A stretch of DNA of 64,000 nt, taken from Podarcis tiliguerta (taxonomy: Eukaryota). Of this stretch, positions 8,792 through 52,569 are shown one piece after another (within the stretch, counting starts at the first letter, position 1; each line of letters begins with the position of its first letter). The translations under genes were made by a program, and so were the position numbers. The notes beneath the pieces were generated by a model that was not told where the DNA came from, did not search any database, and worked only from the letters and a program-made list of their open reading frames with translations. The stretch lies in assembly GCA_965153285.1 (NCBI GenBank), contig OZ229110.1. The stretch is one strand, 5' to 3'.

Positions 8792-9504
8792 TATGATTCT
8801 CTGAACCTGCTACCCCCTAAGCAATAAACACCTGGATTAAACCCGTCCTTATTGTATCTGACCCACTTTTTAATGATATCTGCTTCCCCTCTTGTTTGAC
8901 TGGGTGCTAGTTTTCCTCTATGAATGCTGCTGCTGTTTTCGTTATATTGTTTTAAGATGACACTTAACGGCTTTGCTCCATTTTGCTGTTAGCTACCTCA
9001 AAACCTCAGTAAATAAAGAATAAAATATGAGACACTGACTCCATGAAGGCAGAAACTGTGTTTCCTAACATTTCATACATGCATTGGAAGAATCTGAGTT
9101 TAGCGCAGGCACCAACCTGGTACCCTAGAAAATAAAGGCAAGCTGAGGAAAGGCCCTTGGGAAGCTATGTTTGCATTTGGGGCTCAGACCGTGAGTAGAA
9201 GCCTACTTATGCTGGTTACAGGGAGAAGCAGGACTGGCTGGGAGCTGAGATATCAGAGGGTACCATCCTGGTTCTCCAGTACCAACATGGCCATTACAAA
9301 CCAAAAGAGAATGATGGATAATATCATTTTTCATTTCCATGTGCAAATACTTCATATAGCTTCACAGCAATGATGTGGAGCAAAGCTAGGCTAAAAGACA
9401 ATGGCCAAAGGCCACACGGCAACCCCCTCTGTCTCCTTAACCAACCTTGGGCTCCCAGATAATTGTTGGAATAACAATTTGACAAACCAATCTTGCAACA
9501 TTAC

Positions 9505-9596
9505 ATTTTGCCCGTGTCTGCTTTCCGGCAGCCGTAGACCTCGCCAAAGCCGCCACGCCCGATGATCCGGTGGACGCTGAAGTCATTCATGGTCAG
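9505..9596 (-). CDS. GRK2: GRK2 exon 8 ([31 protein letters not shown]; Gly-rich loop)
   Basis: Translation; AG/GTAAT boundaries; 92 nt. Confidence 0.98.
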
Positions 9597-10264
9597 CTGG
9601 GTCCCACAAAGCAGAGAGCATGAACAAACATGATTGGGGGGGGGGGGAGAAAGGAGACCAAGAACGTTAACATGTTGCTGGCACCACCTTTACCCTTTCA
9701 GGGGTCTCGGTCTACCCGTCATAGAAAGGAATGGCCTCCCACAGGCACTCCTCTCACCCACAGTGACCTTTCCTCATATCCTGCTTTCAAATTATGACCC
9801 AAGGTTATTTTGTGTCACATGTGGGTATCTCTAGGAAAGCTTTCCCCAGCCTGAGGTTCTCCAGATGGGGCTGTGCCGGCTGAGGCTAATGGGAATTGTA
9901 CGGAGGATCCCATTTTAGGGGTAGTTGCTCTTGGATTATTGGGGAGCCAGAACTGGGCTTGCTTCTCAAGCTCTCATGACGGACAAGAAACCCTCACATT
10001 CTCTCATCTCATTTACCCAGTGAAGACGATCGTAATCCTGGTTTTCCCTGAAGCTACTAAATCGGTGAACTTCCTGAGACAGGGATTAGTCCCCCACACA
10101 CCACCAACCTCCCATCAACTACACGACCAGCAACTTTGCAAATCCTATGCACTTTGCCATTCTGCAACAATGTGGCTGCAGGCAGGTCCATGCTTAGTGT
10201 CTTTTGACAGCTCTTTTTTTATCGCCGCAGCTCTCAGGAATGCCCTCCCTCCTCAGGCACTCAC

Positions 10265-37500: not shown

Positions 37501-39489
37501 TTCACTTTCAGGTAAATTTGTCTGATGGTACTGATCTCATGGAGGAAGCTTCTGAACAGCTTCTTGAGAAGTTTTGCTAGAAAATCTCTGAACCAGAGGT
37601 TATGAACTAACCAAATGACAGTGGAAGACAGGGATTGGAATTTCTGTCTTGCTGTATGTATATTTAAAGTATCCTGAACTGGAAAGGAATATTACCTGCT
37701 AGGCAGAAATAGAAGGGAACTGAGTAGGGGAGAGGCCCTATATTGTAATCATGTAGCAACTTCCCCTCAATTCCAGTCTACACTGTTAAAGCTATTACCT
37801 TACTGTGAGATACAAATTACTTTGTTGTAGAGGCAAAATTCATTACGAGTAACAGATAAAATCTGATAAATCTTTGAAGCATTTTACATACTATTGACAA
37901 AAGAAGAAACAAGTCTGAAGCAAAGGTGACGTAGATAAGGTGCTTTTTTTTTTAATGAAATAACAAATGTTTTGGTTTTGAACACTGTTCCTTGGCAAGG
38001 AAATAACTGGGCAACTTTTTAAGCTGCAACCTCTCTTGCGTTCAGTTCTTTGGCCCTGCAGACAATGTGGGCACTATTACTTCACTTCAGCTCTGTGGGG
38101 CAGAAGATAAGCTTGACTGAGAAATCAGTGGAAGATAGAACTAGGATCTTTATGACAACTTGATTGGGTTATTTCTGAAGCTGCCATTCTGACTTTTTCT
38201 AGAAAATGGCTAGCCGCCCTTCTCTGGATCAAAAACCCATCTCCCCAGTCACACAGCTGCTTGTTGAACACCAGGTACCTCTTTGAGAGAAGATAGCTTA
38301 AAGCCTTCAGGCTTGAGGATGTTTGCATGGATAGATGGCTTGACATACTCCACTCAGCTTTTATTAATGGGATCACTATGACCTTACTTGGCAGGGAAAA
38401 CATTTGGTGACTGTAGCTTCCACTTTTGAGAAGCAGCATTGTGGATGAAAAAAACAACCCTCTGGAACCTCCTAGAATAGCTATTCAAGATCACTTGATT
38501 TAGGTGGTTTATTATTACATTGTAACACCACATAGGAGGGCTAGGAATGGAGAAAACACAGAATAGAGATCTTTTGAAACAGCTTATTAAAAATTAGAAC
38601 CAAGCTGGTTCAGGATTTCAGGCTTAGTTCCAAGAAAGACTATTGGGTTCAGGTTGGAAAATTGCTGCTTAGCTTCAGTTTAACTTGTGAGTCATCAACA
38701 TAATACGAATGCCCAAGATTTTGTGACCATTTCCATATGTTAAGTTGGAAGCCAACAACAGAGTAAAACAGCAAAATTCAATCCCGTCTCCGACACTCAA
38801 GTCAAAATGTGCAAGTCAAAATCCAGATTTGTCAGCCAAATTCCACAAGTTAGTCACAAGCAGAAGTGTTTTGCAGATGAAGCCCACTAGTAATAACTCA
38901 TATTTAATTTCTTAAAACACAAAATAGCAGTCAATATCAGGAGCTGTAAGTTTGGCTCATGCCATCCATGGTGAGTCAGGTATATGACTGGTTTTTGAGC
39001 CTTTTAGCAGACTCTCCATGTGTGTGTTTCTGTGCATGCACATAACAAATTAATCTTTACCAACAAAGTGCCATTCAAAACCCGCAGTGTCTTCAGAGTA
39101 CCTCTGTTAAAGACATCAATAAGTGGGGCAAGCAGAAGTCAAGGCAAAGTTGTAGGAGGTTAAGGGATGACGAAAGACAGCAGGACAATAAGGAAAATGA
39201 AACAACATGTACAGCTAACTGAACAGAACAGTCCTTTAGGACAGCGGGCTCTAGGTCAGGAATCAGAGACTGCATTTTATAAGGAGGGCCATGGGATTGT
39301 GACCAAGTCCCAGTGAGGTCCTTAATTCTCTTGTCCTGGATGCTTTTATAGATGCGGTATCATTTTAAATCATCCCTCTATCTAGGTAGAACTATATTTT
39401 ATTTTTTTATTTTTTTAAATGGCAGCTAGGATATTCAGGCCTCCAGTCCACATTAGAACTTTAGTCTGGTTTGATATATGAGCTTAGAT

Positions 39490-40231
39490 CAGGGGTCAGC
39501 AAACTTTTTCATCAGGGGGCCAGTCCATTGTCCCTCAGACCTTGTGGGGACGGATGGACTATATTTTGAAAAATATAAATACTTTGCAAGCCAGTCCTGC
39601 AGCTGCCTCCGGACCTGGAGGAAGGTACTCTGCACACGCTCAGGAGCATGTTTCGGTGCCCCCTGTTCACCGGCCTTGTTGACGAGCAGCAGCCGCTCCA
39701 TCAGCCCGTCCCTGCAGAGCTCCCAGGTGGCGTGCACCATGTGCTGCGGCCCATGCATGTGGAGCGCCGGGCAGGTGACGTGCAGCTCACCCTCCAGCTG
39801 TTCCTGCGCGGCCACCAAACGCACCACCAGCAGGTGTGCTGAGCCGGGCACCAGGCGCGGGGCCAGCAGGCATGCCAAGCTCTGGCTGAAGCCCACGATG
39901 GGCCCGTCATGATGCCCATGGTGCAGCCCAGACCTGCTGCCTACCCACCAGCCTCTCCGTCCATGGCTGCGCTGGGTTTACCTCAGCATGTGGGTGGCGA
40001 GGCTTTGGATTGGCTGCAGGAACTTCTTGCAGCCAATCCGCAGCTGTGCCAGCATCGGGGAAGTCAGTCCCAGTGCGGTGAGGCATCTGCGGCTTCTTTT
40101 CAAGGAAACACCATGCTGTACCAGTTTTGCTCTGCACAGGGCCTGACCAAAGGGGCGGCAGGTTCCGCGGGCTGGATTTATGAGCCTGGTGGGCCGTATC
40201 TGGGCCCCGGACCGTAGTTTGCTGACCCCTG
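39490..40231. mobile_element. hAT (Charlie-like) non-autonomous element carrying a captured gene fragment
   Basis: Perfect 16-bp TIRs CAGGGGTCAGCAAACT / AGTTTGCTGACCCCTG; 8-bp TSD GCTTAGAT / GCTTAGAC; GC-rich coding-like interior. Confidence 0.9.
39584..40142 (-). pseudogene. Captured two-exon fragment of an unidentified protein-coding gene (exon A 40142-39982, 96-nt GT-AG intron, exon B 39885-~39584)
   Basis: Strong G/C-ending codon bias in exon B; splicing AG|GTAAAC...CTTCAG|C removes the only in-frame stop and joins the frames. Confidence 0.7.
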
Positions 40232-41260
40232 GCTTAGACCAACAGAAAACAGCCTTTGCTGAAGGGTTTCCAAATTCTTCCAAGGGGCTTTCTCTGTTTT
40301 GTAACAATTAGAGAAGTAATATTGGGTTAAACCTCATCTGAAAAATGTTTTTTGCAGAAATGGGGACTCATAGCTGACCACCTTATGGAAAAGTAAAAGA
40401 CAATACTAATACTACAAACGTACTCCGGAAAGCCCATTTCAAGATCTGACCCCCTTTCCCCACTATTTAATTTTCCCCACCACAATTTAATTTTCCCCAT
40501 CCCACAGATTTAAAGCTTTCTCATGTTACGTATGTTACATCATAGGGCATTTGTAAATGTAAAATTATGCAACAATCCCCTCTCTGCCTGTAAAACCTTG
40601 TACCAACTCACTCTACAGTTTGAGCAACTAAAATATTCTCTTAGCTACCTACAAGAAGGTTCAAGCTTGAGTAGTAAATCTATGTGGATAGAAATCTAAC
40701 AGATGGTGTATGTCTCTACTATCTAGTAACTTAGATCCCAAGCTATTTGCCATGCACACACAAGGTAAGTCCTATTGAATTTGCTCCCAGGTAGAGAGGA
40801 TTGTCGGCTTAATTATTTTCCCTCACTGGCTTGATTCAGGCATCTTAGGATACTTCAGTAGAAGAACAAAACAAAGCTAACAAATGACTAGTAAGTAAAT
40901 ACATAAATAAGGTAATAAATAGAGCAAATTAACATTGTTTTAATATAGAACCTCAATACCATTCTACACCTGACCCAGGTAAGATGTTCCTGGTGTGCTC
41001 ACACAGGGTGGCCAACTTTTGATATCATGGCTTTACTAATTAGGCCAGGAAAATACTGGCCAACTGGTACCAATAACTACATGGTGAACAGCATGAATAT
41101 TTGAAGGGGAGATGCACATTTGCAAATAAATATGTAGAGACATATGGCCAAGCACAGCCCCCTGGTATATGGATTTATTTTTCATCCTCTAGTGATCTGG
41201 TTGTGCCAGCGTTTGCAGGGTTGTTCACTTCTTGCACTGAATGTGCTTACATGTTGTCTA

Positions 41261-41617
41261 TAAAGGTAAAGGTAAAGGTAAAGGTACCCCTGCCCGAACG
41301 GGCCAGTCGTGTCCGACTCTGGGGTTGCGCGCCCATCTCGCTTAAGAGGCCGGGGGCCAGCGCTGTCCGGAGACACTTCCGGGTCACATGGCCAGTGTGA
41401 CAAGCTGCATCTGGCGAGCCAGCACAGCACACGGAAACACTGTTTACCTTCCCGCTAGTAAGCAGTCCCTATTTATCTACTTGCACCCGGGGGTGCTTTC
41501 GAACTGCTAGGTTGGCAGGCGCTGGGACTGAGCAACGGGAGCACACCCCGCCGCGGGGATTCAAACCGCCGACCTGACGATCGGCAAGTCCTAGGCGCTG
41601 AGGTTTTACCCACAGCG
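41261..41617 (-). mobile_element. Sauria SINE
   Basis: (ACCTTT)n 3' tail; tRNA-like head with B box (GGTTTGAATCCC); core CCTGCCAACCTAGCAGTTCGAAAGCAC. Confidence 0.9.
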
Positions 41618-43363
41618 ACTGTACTCATGTTGGTTTTTAAAATACATTGCTATTTTGCAGATACACCAAAACAGATCCATGAGCGAGGGTGCAGGAGCCT
41701 TCTGTATTTTACATCAGGATGCTTCAAAATTCAAAATCTAGAACCTTGTGAACATTTAAGTGTGAATCTTATGATCTGATATTTCCTTAAAAACTTCCTC
41801 AGAGAACACTCAACTTCTTCCAGACTAAGCACACAGTTTAAGAGGTACACAGTACATATCCTTCTCTTGTGATACGGGGACCCCAAACATCAATTAATCT
41901 AAATCAAAAATATTTTGCCCACCTCATGGTTTGTGGATATACACAAATAAACTGTCTGCAGAGTATCAGAACATCCAAAAGCTGCCGTTGGCTCAAGTAG
42001 CAATTTTCTGGTTTTAATCAATCCATGAATGAGGAAGAGGGTGGTATGGATTTAGGAAATTGGACTCTAGGGAGATGTTTAAAGGCCCCAAATATGGAGA
42101 TTACAAATTAAGCTCAGCAGATGGTACTTTTCCTCCAGGAGGGAGGAAGCAATTTGTAGCCACAAACATTGCCCAAATTTGAGGCTTTAAGTTAAACGGT
42201 GGCAACATACACCACCAATGCTTGCTTTTGAAGGGTGATGGTTGGGGTGGGGGGAGCTGGGGCAATAGAAAGCACAGTTTAAATGCTGCTAAAGAGAGAG
42301 AAGTTAACATTTTCACAAACAGAAGTATATTTTTAAAAATCAAAGGGAATTAATTTACTATTTGTGCTCTATTATCTGACAGTTGTTCAACCAATGAGAA
42401 ACAGTGTTTTCAAAGTAGCAAAGATGCTGGTGCTTATAAAATATTGCCTTATATGGAGTCGGAAAACTGGTCAATTTAGGCCAGAGCTGGTGGTGGATCT
42501 GCTAGGCCACACACAGACGTCTTACTTCTAGAGATCCTTTCAATTGGGAGATTAAACCTGGGGCTGCTCAAGACAGTCCAAATGCATCACTGCATGACAG
42601 CTGCAATCTTTGAGGTTTGCTTCCACCTTCTAACATTTCTTTCGGTTTCAGTTATAAAGGATATACCATTAGCATGAACTTTTGACAGAATGAACACAAA
42701 GTATACCTCACTTCCTAAGAGAAGCTTGCAAACCAACCTGCAGAAGACACTTTGTTAATTCAATTTCTTACAAAGACTCTTTAGTTGGCTTTCATATACA
42801 TACGCTAAGGAAGTGACATGTTTAACACCCTTTTACAGATCTGAGAGTATGAGCTCACATGATCGTTGCTTTCCTTATAGGCCAGCATATTTCATGCTGC
42901 ATTTCCTGCCTTCTCTCAGTCACTTGTTAGACTGTCAGGGCATCTTCAACAAGTGCCCCAAACGCTATTCAGTAAAGGGCTCCAACGAGTTGGCCTTGCT
43001 ATTATGAACTTTTTGTAACTAGATTTACCTGATTTGTTTTCAGCTAGCAGCTGTCATATACGTCTGCTAGATTAGCACTTGCTCCTATCAGAAGCCAATA
43101 CGTAGAATGAAAACTTCTGTTTTTATTTGACAGCTTTATCCTATATCCTCAACACTACAGTGTTCCCAGGGCAGCTTATAATTAGAGATCTTTCCCTCAT
43201 CCCCCAGGTATCTACAGTACTCATTTTCCCGAGCCTTTTCCGATTTTTCCAACGTGTTTTGAAAATTGAGTCCAGCAATTTTGGCCACAGTGCCCTGAAG
43301 TTACATTTATACCAACAGGTTGTAGCATGTGAGCCAGAAGGGACTGGATAAATAGTTCAGATA

Positions 43364-50408: not shown

Positions 50409-50759
50409 AGGGACGCGGGTGGCGCTGTGGGTTAGACCATAGAGCCTAGGACTTGCCGATCAGAAGGTCGGCGGTTCAAATCCCCACGACAGGGTGAGCT
50501 CCAGTTGCTCGGTCCCTGTTCCTGCCAACCTAGCAGTTCGAAAGCATGTCAAAGTACAAGTAGATAAAAAGGTACCGCTCTGGCGGGAAGGTAAACAGCG
50601 TTTCCATGTGCTGCTCTGGTTTGCCAGAAGCAGCTTGGTCATGCTGGCCACATGACCCAGCAGCTGTACACTGGCTCCCTCGGCCAATAAAGCGAGATGA
50701 GCGCCGCAACCTGAGTCAGCCACGACTGGACCTAATGTTCAGGGGGTCCCTTTACCTTT
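50409..50759 (+). mobile_element. Full-length Sauria SINE (different subfamily) in a KDM2A intron
   Basis: GGGACGCGGGTGGCGCTGTGG head, B box, core, ACCTTT tail; 11-bp TSD AGTACTTATGT (50398-50408, 50760-50770). Confidence 0.93.
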
Positions 50760-52569
50760 AGTACTTATGTCTTTTGAAACCAAGGAGAGAAAACGCCCCT
50801 CTAGTCTATGATGGGTAGGTAACCCCAATTCTTTTCTCTTGGACTTAGTCAACTTCCCTCAGCCCTTCAACAGGTGTATCTGGTACAATATTGTGTTTCC
50901 TTTGAGACACTTAAATTTATTCTTTCCACGGGGATAATAGAAATATGGTTCTTGAAGATCACTGAAAAATAGCTAAAGTAACTGACTATGAAGGCTACTG
51001 CTAGATACACCTTCAAGACTATTCTTTTCCATCTATGAAGCTTTATAGAACCAAAGCACACTTTAACTTCTAGAAAACTACACATTATATATCTAACAAA
51101 GAAAATCGGAATTAAGGTAGTAGGATGGATATATGTTCACCTTCCTAACATCATCATCCTAGATCTTCTCTGTGTAAACATATTCAAGGTAGAGGGTATC
51201 CCACAAAATCTTATTTGGGAAATGAAAAACTTGTAAGACACTTTAAAGCTAATTCATTATTCACAGTTGTGAAGGAAAATTGGGTGGAAAAGAAAACTTG
51301 TGTTGATAATAAAAAACTTACAATATTTTCTAATTGAGCCAAGACAAAAATTATTGCATTCCTTTGTGACCGAGAATTTATATTAAGGGATTCTACATCA
51401 TCACCTTTAAAAAAAATGTGTGCTTTTGAGAAGTTGTTGATGAATGAATAAAGTAATGTCTTTCTGATATGTATGTTTCTCTGACTCTCACACTGCTGGT
51501 TGGAATACACATGGGGTAAGACTGTCTTGCTGCAGGGGTAAGCAATGCCCATGTATTCTCCTTGGAGTCCTAAGCTTCTAATTCTGAAACACCTGAGATG
51601 CTATCCTATTTATTACACTTATACTTCACTCTTCCTCCCAAATGATCCCAGGTGGCAACATTACTTCATACTTTGAAATCTGAGGGGCTCAACTACTGAG
51701 TTAAATATCTACTCCTCATAGTAGTAGGGCTCTTGCTGACCCTCGAGGGCTGGAATATTCCTCGTAAGTTATATCCAGATATGACATTTGCATATTAACA
51801 TTGGCAAAAAAAATATAATCTGGCTCGTAAAAGGCTTCCTGAATTAGGAGGTTGCCATCTAAGTTTTTCTGTATCAGATTTAGGATGCCTCTGGTCTATC
51901 AGCAGAATATCCTTAAAGCTTTCAGCTTTGATTCTGTGTTCATTGCAGGTAACATGTCTTTTCTAATACAATTAATTGGCTGAGGCGGGATACTACGCTG
52001 GTAACTCTTAAGGCTAAGAGTTACATTTGTGTATATTGGCTGACTGAGACTAGCTATATCTTATCAGCTCTACCTCTCCACTGCAGAATTTTTTGAATTG
52101 GGCATGCTTCATTTTTCTGACTTTTAGCCCTTGAATCATTCTTCATCTTAGAAAGTTTTTGGGGGGTGGGGAAGCAAGGAATCTGAGGTTTTCTGCTCAT
52201 GCTTGAAGACAGGTTCTCCTTAAAGATAGCAGCATTTAGGGAAACTGAAGCTGGGAGTATCTCTCCCTTTTTCAGAGATGGGCTTCTTAAGACATGGAGG
52301 GAGAAAGTATAATTCTCCCCAATTGTAAAATATGGTCATGTCCATCTGATGATTTTACATCTAATCTAGGTCCAATGGTTATATAGAATAAGTATAGAAC
52401 TAGCAACTCGGGTGCATAGAGTTGCTTAAGCAAGTTCTTAGGATTTAATAGCCTCAGGACATCATTTTGATTCCTATTGGTTACACACAGCTTTACCAGA
52501 AAGGAGCAACACATGGAGTTTGGTCAGACGATACCCAAATGATGAAAGACTACTAGGATAATTATCTAA

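What the first reader, a model, noticed from the sequence alone, without database searches (positions are those of the whole stretch)
39490..40231. hAT transposon that has captured an exon-intron-exon piece of another gene (Pack-type transduplication)
Seen: perfect 16-bp TIRs and an 8-bp TSD (7/8 match) bound a 742-bp element. Its interior (~39584-40160) is GC/CpG-rich and coding-like against AT-rich flanks. On the minus strand there is an acceptor (cccctttggtcAG, 40143-40144), a 161-nt exon, a 96-nt GTAAAC...cttcAG intron, and a ~300-nt exon with strongly G/C-ending codons. Splicing removes the only stop and gives ALCRAKLVQHGVSLKRSRRCLTALGLTSPMLAQLRIGCKKFLQPIQSLATHMLSQSLACLLAPRLVPGSAHLLVVRLVAAQEQLEGELHVTCPALHMHGPQHMVHATWELCRDGLMERLLLVNKAGEQGAPKHAPERVQSTFLQVRRQLQDWLAK. 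This does not look like a transposase, GRK2 or KDM2A, and I cannot name the parent gene. The retained intron implies DNA-level capture, not retroposition. Established: gene capture by TIR elements is well known in plants (Pack-MULEs) and much less documented in vertebrates. Inference: a cargo-carrying hAT family could shuffle exons in this lineage. The cassette is on the same strand as KDM2A and GRK2, so read-through transcripts could splice into it.
Basis: partly seen in the sequence, partly recalled or inferred. Interest (0 to 1): 0.8.

Follow-up and report, generated by a model that had tools for sequence, protein, structure and literature searches.

The report
Dead hAT transposon carrying SPR exon 1
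A 742-base dead cut-and-paste transposon between the lizard KDM2A and GRK2 genes carries a decayed DNA copy of the first exon and intron start of sepiapterin reductase (SPR), the wall-lizard orange-colour gene; it belongs to a many-copy family that this scan had already found elsewhere in the genome.

Summary
The element is real. It has perfect 16-nt inverted ends (39490-39505 / 40216-40231), an 8-bp target duplication matching 7/8, and a GC-rich interior.

The exon-intron-exon model is wrong.
- The 96-nt "intron" is the N-terminal part of that same exon. Its ATG lies at 39964-39962. It is broken by a TAG at codon 8 and a 1-nt deletion inside the TGASRGFG cofactor motif.

Homology to Podarcis SPR runs from Met1 to the conserved exon 1 / intron 1 border (39671|GT). 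After that the sequence reads on into intron-like DNA, so capture was at the DNA level.

The copy is pseudogenised. It has a stop, a frameshift, a 30-nt deletion and mostly CpG-type changes, and is about 67% identical to lacertid SPR.

It is not a one-off cargo.
- Contigs of four coded organisms hold roughly 5-60 copies each.
- Gene models from such copies exist in Podarcis muralis, P. lilfordi and Zootoca.
- The scan found this SPR-carrying family before on other DNA of this genome (s1-821216, s1-824066, s1-832742).

The element is intergenic: about 7 kb past the KDM2A stop and 11 kb before the GRK2 ATG.

No expression data were obtained.

The parts
39482..39489 (.). Left copy of the 8-bp target-site duplication (GCTTAGAT)
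   Evidence: family D6. Matches 40232-40239 at 7 of 8 positions.
39490..39505 (+). Left terminal inverted repeat, CAGGGGTCAGCAAACT
   Evidence: pair I3: 16 nt, 100% complementary; the only exact matches in the window.
39490..39583 (.). hAT backbone end, shared with a very abundant short (MITE-like) family
   Evidence: table 2: summed contig depth about 1e6 at 39495-39533, against 12 for the single-copy flank, in all four organisms. The read-through peptide YLYFSKYSP is shared with P0001.
39584..39670 (-). Start of SPR intron 1 (begins GTGAAC at 39670), inferred
   Evidence: Homology to true SPR stops at ...LLLVNNA/G. Family copies P0001-P0004 share the read-through GE(R/Q)..P(R/K)HAPE(H/R)VQS(A/T)F(L)LQV. 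The human SPR intron 1 donor follows c.304, the first base of codon 102 (PMC6454308). Parental DNA was not compared.
39671..39964 (-). Decayed copy of the SPR exon 1 coding sequence (Met1 to the first base of the codon after NNA)
   Evidence: tblastn with Podarcis muralis SPR P0027: residues 1-29 at 39964-39878 and residues 25-112 at 39893-39660, joint E 5e-23. PDB SPR chains, E 0.03. 65-69% identity to lacertid SPRs over 96 residues.
39941..39943 (-). Premature stop (TAG) at SPR codon 8 (Arg in lacertid SPR)
39892..39894 (-). C-run with a 1-nt deletion (frameshift at SPR codon 24/25, inside TGASRGFG)
   Evidence: frame -1 changes to -3 here. table 4: other copies have a C put in behind 39891.
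39754..39761 (-). Site of a deletion of about 30 nt (GLPADLA(S/T)DD missing)
   Evidence: Searches show a 10-residue gap. table 5c: another copy in X1 has 37 letters here, which encode GLPADLASD.
39965..40160 (-). Sequence upstream of the SPR ATG. It is either SPR 5'UTR/promoter or family-specific backbone, and the boundary is not resolved.
   Evidence: Depth is similar to the cargo (84-508 against 12), not to the abundant backbone. No protein or Pfam match.
40007..40039 (.). 33-nt near-palindrome with two inverted CCAAT boxes (GGATTGGCTGCAGGAACTTCTTGCAGCCAATCC)
   Evidence: pair I1; depth about 1e5 at 40002-40040 in all four organisms, with different flanks (loose ends at 40001 and 40038).
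40161..40231 (.). Right hAT end, including the right TIR at 40216-40231
   Evidence: pair I3. depth 540-700 (a family-level repeat).
40232..40239 (.). Right copy of the target-site duplication (GCTTAGAC)

Best explanation
This is an old, immobile, non-autonomous hAT-type DNA transposon (a 'Pack-hAT'). Its interior is a DNA-level copy of the 5' end of the lizard sepiapterin reductase gene, read on the minus strand: some upstream sequence, the whole coding part of exon 1 (39964-39671), and the first 90 or so nt of intron 1.

Inferred mechanism:
- A hAT element acquired the SPR fragment in an ancestral lacertid. The likely route is gap repair or template switching while a transposon break was being repaired.
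- The loaded element was then mobilised in trans by an autonomous hAT transposase and spread to tens of sites.
- This copy landed between KDM2A and GRK2.
- Since then it has decayed neutrally: a stop codon, a frameshift, a 30-nt deletion and many CpG-to-TpG changes.
- It has no coding function now.
For: Shown:
- TIRs and TSD.
- No transposase or any Pfam domain in any long frame.
- Podarcis muralis SPR aligns from Met1 to residue 101 or so in two frames, joint E 5e-23.
- The first seven residues, MDGEAGG, are identical to lacertid SPR, and the Rossmann motif is recognisable as IMTGPSW-GFSQS against IVTGASRGFGRS.
- Human SPR structures are the only PDB matches, E 0.03.
- Identity is 65-69% to lacertid SPRs but 44-56% to other squamate SPRs.
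- Homology ends at the conserved exon 1 donor, GCC G|GTGAAC at 39671|39670, which corresponds to human c.304+1 (PMC6454308). The next residues are not exon 2 (ASLGDVSK). They are a read-through shared with the other copies.
- phmmer against 1.84 billion proteins gives 12 hits. The best are short 'uncharacterized' models from P. muralis, P. lilfordi and Zootoca vivipara. They lie on at least five different P. lilfordi chromosome-scale contigs, none of which is the SPR contig. One model (P0001) runs on into the same hAT-end peptide, YLYFSKYSP.
- Contigs of four coded organisms cover the whole element at 5-60 times single-copy depth, with 16-30 variant contigs per site.
- 32 amino-acid differences from Lacerta SPR are mostly CpG-transition types: R>C/H/Q/W, A>V/T, V>M, S>L, P>L.
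- Contigs of organisms B and C span the private 30-nt deletion without a gap. Contigs of C and D span the frameshift site without a gap. A contig of C joins the left flank to the TIR (table 8, records 17, 28, 30, 12, 25). The insertion is therefore old and shared.
Against: - The intron-1 and upstream parts of the cargo, and both cargo boundaries, are inferred and not aligned.
- hAT membership rests on the TSD length and the TIR, with no transposase relative or library consensus to compare against.
- The 39549-to-40001 joints and the very abundant 40002-40040 palindrome could mean that part of 'upstream' is backbone and not SPR.
- Copy number comes from summed contig depth at 85% likeness or more, which is crude.
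Confidence: 0.9

Rival explanations
1. One reading: the cargo is an exon-intron-exon piece of an unidentified gene, with a 96-nt GT..AG intron at 39886-39981.
For: GT and AG dinucleotides stand at the stated places, and removing the 96 nt gives one open frame.
Against: - The 'intron' encodes SPR residues 1-24 colinearly with the 'exon 2' residues.
- Its AG lies inside the GFG codons.
- Other copies and true SPR read straight through it.
The exons were searched apart.
Confidence: 0.02
2. The interior is ordinary hAT family sequence with no host-gene origin, and the SPR likeness is chance in GC-rich DNA.
For: The interior is multi-copy. GC-rich DNA gives long open frames on both strands. The PDB E-value alone is weak, at 0.03.
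Against: - Colinear match from Met1 to the exon border with the same-lineage SPR, E 5e-23.
- Lineage-specific N-terminus MDGEAGG.
- Identity is graded by phylogeny: lacertids higher than other squamates.
Confidence: 0.02
3. It is a processed (retro-) pseudogene of SPR that happens to lie between hAT ends.
For: It is a dead copy of a coding sequence.
Against: - Only exon 1 is present.
- A GT donor and non-exon-2 sequence follow it.
- There is no poly(A) tail.
- The same cargo/backbone junction is seen in another copy, P0001.
Confidence: 0.01
4. The copy, or the family, is exapted. Examples would be a dispersed CpG-island or CCAAT promoter fragment, a source of small RNAs against SPR, or an exon of KDM2A/GRK2 read-through transcripts.
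For: - It has the same orientation as both neighbouring genes.
- CpG o/e is still 0.48 against 0.2 in the flanks.
- Two CCAAT boxes lie about 45-70 nt upstream of the ATG.
- The insertion is retained in several species.
Against: - No RNA holder was found.
- The decay pattern looks neutral, with a stop and a frameshift.
- The position is intergenic.
- Retention of old neutral insertions is the norm.
Confidence: 0.05

Closest known systems
Pack-TIRs of animals (Tan et al. 2021, Nat Commun 12:4280, PMC8277862), especially Pack-hAT such as Pack-hAT-N8_XT carrying the CAPSL 5'UTR in Xenopus tropicalis
   Same: A transposase-less TIR element with a TSD that carries a short host gene fragment copied as DNA. 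hAT is the commonest carrier (208 of 370 Pack-TIRs). 5' gene ends are captured.
   Different: That survey of 100 animal genomes found only four multicopy cases, and its example has three copies. This family has tens of copies in each of several lacertids. No lizard is mentioned in that paper's main text (0 occurrences).
Pack-MULEs / Pack-TYPE transposons of plants (e.g. PMC8903248, PMC5861414)
   Same: TIR transposons that pick up and amplify GC-rich gene fragments, often 5' ends, at the DNA level with introns retained.
   Different: Different superfamily: Mutator with 9-bp TSDs and long TIRs, against hAT with an 8-bp TSD and 16-nt TIRs. Different kingdom. No evidence of expression or chimeric ORFs here.
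The SPR-exon-1 hAT elements found earlier by this scan in the same genome (s1-821216, s1-824066, s1-832742)
   Same: Same cargo (SPR exon 1 plus intron start), the same kind of carrier, similar sizes (632-859 letters against 742), and a decayed state.
   Different: A different insertion site (the KDM2A-GRK2 spacer). I could not align those copies to this one, so 'same family' rests on their descriptions and on my own protein hits.

Membership tests
hAT superfamily, non-autonomous element | 8-bp target-site duplication | tested here: met
   GCTTAGAT / GCTTAGAC directly flank the TIRs, 7/8 identical.
hAT superfamily, non-autonomous element | Short terminal inverted repeats (about 10-25 bp) starting with CAG/TAG | tested here: met
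   16-nt perfect TIR, CAGGGGTCAGCAAACT. Its likeness to Charlie/MER1-type ends is from memory only.
hAT superfamily, non-autonomous element | Ends shared with an autonomous element that encodes a hAT transposase (BED / RNase-H-like / hAT dimerisation domain) | not testable with these tools
   No repeat library or lizard genome was searchable. No transposase domain lies in this element, as expected for a non-autonomous copy.
hAT superfamily, non-autonomous element | Repeated in the genome, with copies ending at the same termini | tested here: met
   Hundreds of contigs per run end or branch exactly at 39484-39490 with unrelated upstream sequence (table 7). Depth rises from 12 to about 1e6 at the left end (table 2).
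Pack-TIR (gene-fragment-carrying TIR transposon) | The interior is homologous to a host gene located elsewhere | tested here: met
   SPR exon 1, E 5e-23 against Podarcis SPR. In P. lilfordi, SPR sits on a different contig from the copies. No SPR lies in this window.
Pack-TIR (gene-fragment-carrying TIR transposon) | DNA-level capture (non-coding parental sequence such as intron or promoter included) | tested here: inconclusive
   The exon ends at the conserved donor and is followed by GT and non-exon-2 sequence shared among copies. The parental intron DNA could not be fetched for alignment.
Pack-TIR (gene-fragment-carrying TIR transposon) | No transposase gene inside | tested here: met
   742 bp in total. 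No Pfam family in any long frame.
Multicopy (transposed) Pack-TIR | Several copies at different loci, each with its own TSD | tested here: inconclusive
   Dispersed copies are shown by gene models on at least five P. lilfordi contigs and in P. muralis and Zootoca, and by contig depth. The TSDs of the other copies could not be read.
Sepiapterin reductase (functional SDR, PF00106) | Intact ORF with a TGxxxGxG cofactor motif and catalytic S-Y-K residues | tested here: not met
   Only exon 1 is present. It has a stop at codon 8, a frameshift in the motif and a 10-codon deletion. Pfam gives no hit. It is not a member, only a dead fragment.

The most novel reading that the evidence does not exclude
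The 5' exon of SPR may be a recurrent capture target in squamates.
- Lacertids carry an amplified hAT-borne family.
- Rhineura floridana has a decayed 'SPR-like' exon-1-plus-intron-start copy (P0008) that is closest to its own SPR.
- Phrynocephalus forsythii has a similar copy (P0042), also closest to its own SPR.

If these are independent TE captures, SPR's CpG-island 5' end is a hotspot. Tens of dispersed sense and antisense copies could then feed small-RNA or methylation cross-talk onto the SPR promoter region that controls orange colour in wall lizards.
Probability: 0.1. Interest if true: 0.65.

Novelty: new member of a known kind. Interest (0 to 1): 0.35.

Why it matters
On its own this copy is a dead intergenic relic.

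At family level it adds to the evidence that lacertid lizards hold an unusually successful gene-fragment-carrying hAT lineage. The family has tens of copies, whereas the published animal survey (PMC8277862) found almost only single-copy cases.

There is also a practical point. Dispersed SPR-exon-1 look-alikes are annotated as 'uncharacterized proteins' and can mislead read mapping, gene models and association scans around SPR, a locus of interest for wall-lizard colour polymorphism (PMC6431182).

Tried and rejected
- Pfam on five long frames of both strands: nothing.
- Word-index protein search with the exon-2 frame: no hit. This says little, because the search only sees proteins of 72-229 aa.
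- Other copies or a parent in the window: none.
- Rfam on 36-44 kb: nothing.
- The search of earlier findings by sequence: blank.
The parental SPR locus, the other family copies and the Rhineura and Phrynocephalus loci could therefore not be read.
The two exons were searched apart by reference.
- No RNA run was found, so expression is untested.

Full report
**1. The observation**

The sequence at 39490-40231 is bounded by a perfect 16-nt inverted repeat, CAGGGGTCAGCAAACT / AGTTTGCTGACCCCTG (pair I3). These are the only exact matches to that word in the 64-kb window. Directly outside lie GCTTAGAT and GCTTAGAC, an 8-bp duplication with one mismatch. GC is 0.62-0.69 across 39600-40100 against 0.37-0.43 in the flanks. 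CpG observed/expected is 0.48 inside and about 0.2 outside.

**2. What the interior is**

- Pfam finds nothing in any of the five long frames.
- The word-index search with the long minus-strand frame found nothing.
- A sequence search of the PDB with that frame (window:39492-39884:-) returned only sepiapterin reductase chains. Query residues 2-76 match SPR residues 24-108, E 0.03.
- The exhaustive phmmer search of 1.84 billion representatives gave 12 hits. The best (E 6e-26 to 1e-9) are short proteins named 'uncharacterized' or 'hypothetical' from Podarcis muralis, P. lilfordi and Zootoca vivipara. There is also a bird SPR exon-1 fragment.
- Using one hit as a stepping stone, I retrieved full-length squamate SPRs, including Podarcis muralis SPR (P0027, 268 aa).
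- tblastn of P0027 on the window gives two colinear pieces on the minus strand. Residues 1-29 lie at 39964-39878 (frame -1) and residues 25-112 at 39893-39660 (frame -3), joint E 5e-23.

**3. Why the exon-intron-exon model fails**

The three minus-strand frames and the alignment with true SPRs and the family copies show a single exon:
- The ATG is at 39964-39962, and MDGEAGG is identical to lacertid SPR.
- A TAG replaces Arg8 (39943-39941).
- AAGLGCTMGIMTGPSW corresponds to AAGLGRAVGIVTGASR.
- A 1-nt deletion in the C-run 39892-39894 shifts the frame.
- After the shift, GFSQSLACLLAPRLVPGS... corresponds to GFGRSLARLLAPRLAPGS....

Its 'acceptor' cttcAG sits inside the GGC TTC AGC codons of the TGASRGFG cofactor motif. 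The stop it 'removed' is a pseudogene lesion. Other copies in the read data carry an extra C at 39891 (table 4), which confirms the frameshift as private decay.

**4. Evidence for DNA-level capture**

Homology to real SPR ends at ...ERLLLVNKA, then G|GTGAAC (exon's last base 39671, GT at 39670-39669). In human SPR the intron 1 donor follows c.304, the first base of codon 102 in ...NNAG (PMC6454308). That is the same position. Real SPRs continue ASLGDVSK (exon 2). The window continues GEQGAPKHAPERVQSTFLQV, and copies P0001-P0004 continue GER..PRHAPEHVQSAFLLQV. So the copies share a non-exon-2 continuation, most simply the start of intron 1. This step is strongly indicated but not proven.

**5. 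The copy is dead and old**

Lesions are the stop, the frameshift and a 10-codon deletion (GLPADLA(S/T)DD) near 39754-39761. Another copy in run X1 has 37 letters at that site, and they encode GLPADLASD (table 5c). Over 96 aligned residues the copy is 65-69% identical to lacertid SPRs and 44-56% to other squamate SPRs, so the source was a lacertid-lineage SPR. Most of the 32 differences from Lacerta SPR are the kinds produced by CpG transitions: R>C/H/Q/W, A>V/T, V>M, S>L, P>L. That is what a methylated, unconstrained copy is expected to show.

**6. It is a family, not a one-off cargo**

Logan contigs of four coded organisms (A-D) were laid at 85% likeness or more.
- The flanks are single-copy (depth 12 in X1).
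- The cargo bins reach 60-650 in X1, with proportionally similar values in the other three. That is roughly 5-60 copies.
- Many sites show 16-30 distinct variant contigs. Typically this copy has T or A where others have C or G.
- Gene models derived from such copies sit on at least five different chromosome-scale contigs of P. lilfordi, none of them the SPR contig. Others occur in P. muralis and Zootoca.
- One model (P0001) reads on into YLYFSKYSP, the same hAT-end read-through as here. The cargo/backbone junction is therefore shared.
- The scan's own notes describe three other SPR-exon-1 hAT elements in this genome, plus other cargo-bearing hAT elements carrying CRPPA, SORCS2 and PTGDR/CMTM3. 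I treat these notes as leads. The SPR identity of this element is established independently above.

**7. Age of this insertion**

- Contigs of organisms B and C cross the private 30-nt deletion without a gap (records 17 and 28).
- Contigs of C and D cross the frameshift site without a gap (records 30 and 12).
- A contig of C joins the left flank to the TIR (record 25, table 8).

The same insertion, already damaged, therefore exists in several related organisms at about 94-98% identity. It is an old insertion shared by these organisms. Because the organism names are coded, I cannot give a date.

**8. Genomic context**

On the minus strand, KDM2A's last coding exon ends ...DEKLIQKIS* at about 47458. 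GRK2's first coding exon, [19 protein letters not shown], starts at about 28460. The element lies in the spacer between them, about 7.2 kb past the KDM2A stop and about 11 kb upstream of the GRK2 ATG, in the same orientation. It is not inside a coding-region intron. No RNA holder was found. Splicing into neighbouring transcripts remains pure speculation.

**9. Unresolved points**

The left end (39495-39572) is shared with an enormously abundant short family (summed depth about 1e6). The right end is only at family level (about 500-700). A 33-nt near-palindrome with two inverted CCAAT boxes (40007-40039) has depth about 1e5 and appears with other flanks elsewhere. A few contigs join 39549 directly to 40001. 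Hence the upstream cargo boundary lies somewhere between 40000 and 40160. It is open whether the palindrome is SPR promoter or transposon backbone.

**10. Comparison with what is known**

Pack-TIRs are documented in animals. Tan et al. report 370 in 100 genomes, 208 of them hAT, but only four multicopy cases, and the example they describe has three copies (PMC8277862). This element works like those and meets the tests I could run: TIR, 8-bp TSD, no transposase, and a host-gene interior with the parent elsewhere. What is unusual is the family's copy number. That was already noted by this scan, so this finding is a further member and not a new kind. SPR is the gene whose upstream region is associated with orange colour in Podarcis muralis (PMC6431182). 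That paper's main text does not mention transposable elements or repeats.

**11. Verdict**

The parent gene is identified as SPR, and the intron claim is corrected. The element is ordinary within a moderately interesting family.

Noticed in passing
P0008 (XP_061468803.1, Rhineura floridana 'sepiapterin reductase-like', 113 aa) and P0042 (Phrynocephalus forsythii hypothetical protein, partial, 194 aa): Two other squamates have decayed SPR exon-1 copies that read on past the exon border (NNAGEH.., NNAGERM..). Each is closest to its own species' SPR: 78% to Rhineura SPR and 85% to Phrynocephalus SPR, against 60% to Podarcis SPR. P0042 is on a different contig from the real gene. This may be independent duplication or capture of the same exon.
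   Followed up: partly
window 40007-40039 (arms 39995-40051): A near-perfect 33-nt palindrome with two inverted CCAAT boxes. Its summed contig depth is about 1e5 in all four organisms. That is far above the rest of the cargo, and it appears with different flanking sequence elsewhere (tables 2 and 7). It belongs to some very abundant repeat of these genomes.
   Followed up: partly
window 39490-39572: The left hAT end is shared with a hugely abundant short family (summed depth about 1e6 against 12 single-copy). The right end is about 1000 times rarer. No second copy of that abundant family lies in this 64-kb window.
   Followed up: partly
window about 41230-41640 and about 50430-50780 (opposite orientations): Two copies of a tRNA-headed SINE-like repeat. 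The head is GGGTGGCGCTGTGGGTTAGACC...GGTTCAAATCCCC and the tail is rich in GGTAAA repeats. They align well with each other. They explain the GC-rich block at 41.2-41.7 kb. Rfam gave no hit on 36-44 kb.
   Followed up: partly
P0005/P0013 (XP_034995904, Zootoca vivipara 'large ribosomal subunit protein eL27-like', 220 aa): This annotated protein starts with a decayed SPR exon-1 copy (MGIVTGTLRGFSQSL...LLLGNN) fused to an eL27-like C-terminal part. It is probably a gene-model chimera of a family copy and an RPL27 retrocopy.
   Followed up: no
window about 47458 (KDM2A stop, minus strand), about 28460 (GRK2 ATG, minus strand), 9504-9689 (GRK2 kinase exon): Both neighbouring genes read on the minus strand, with a spacer of about 19 kb between the KDM2A stop and the GRK2 start codon.
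   Followed up: partly
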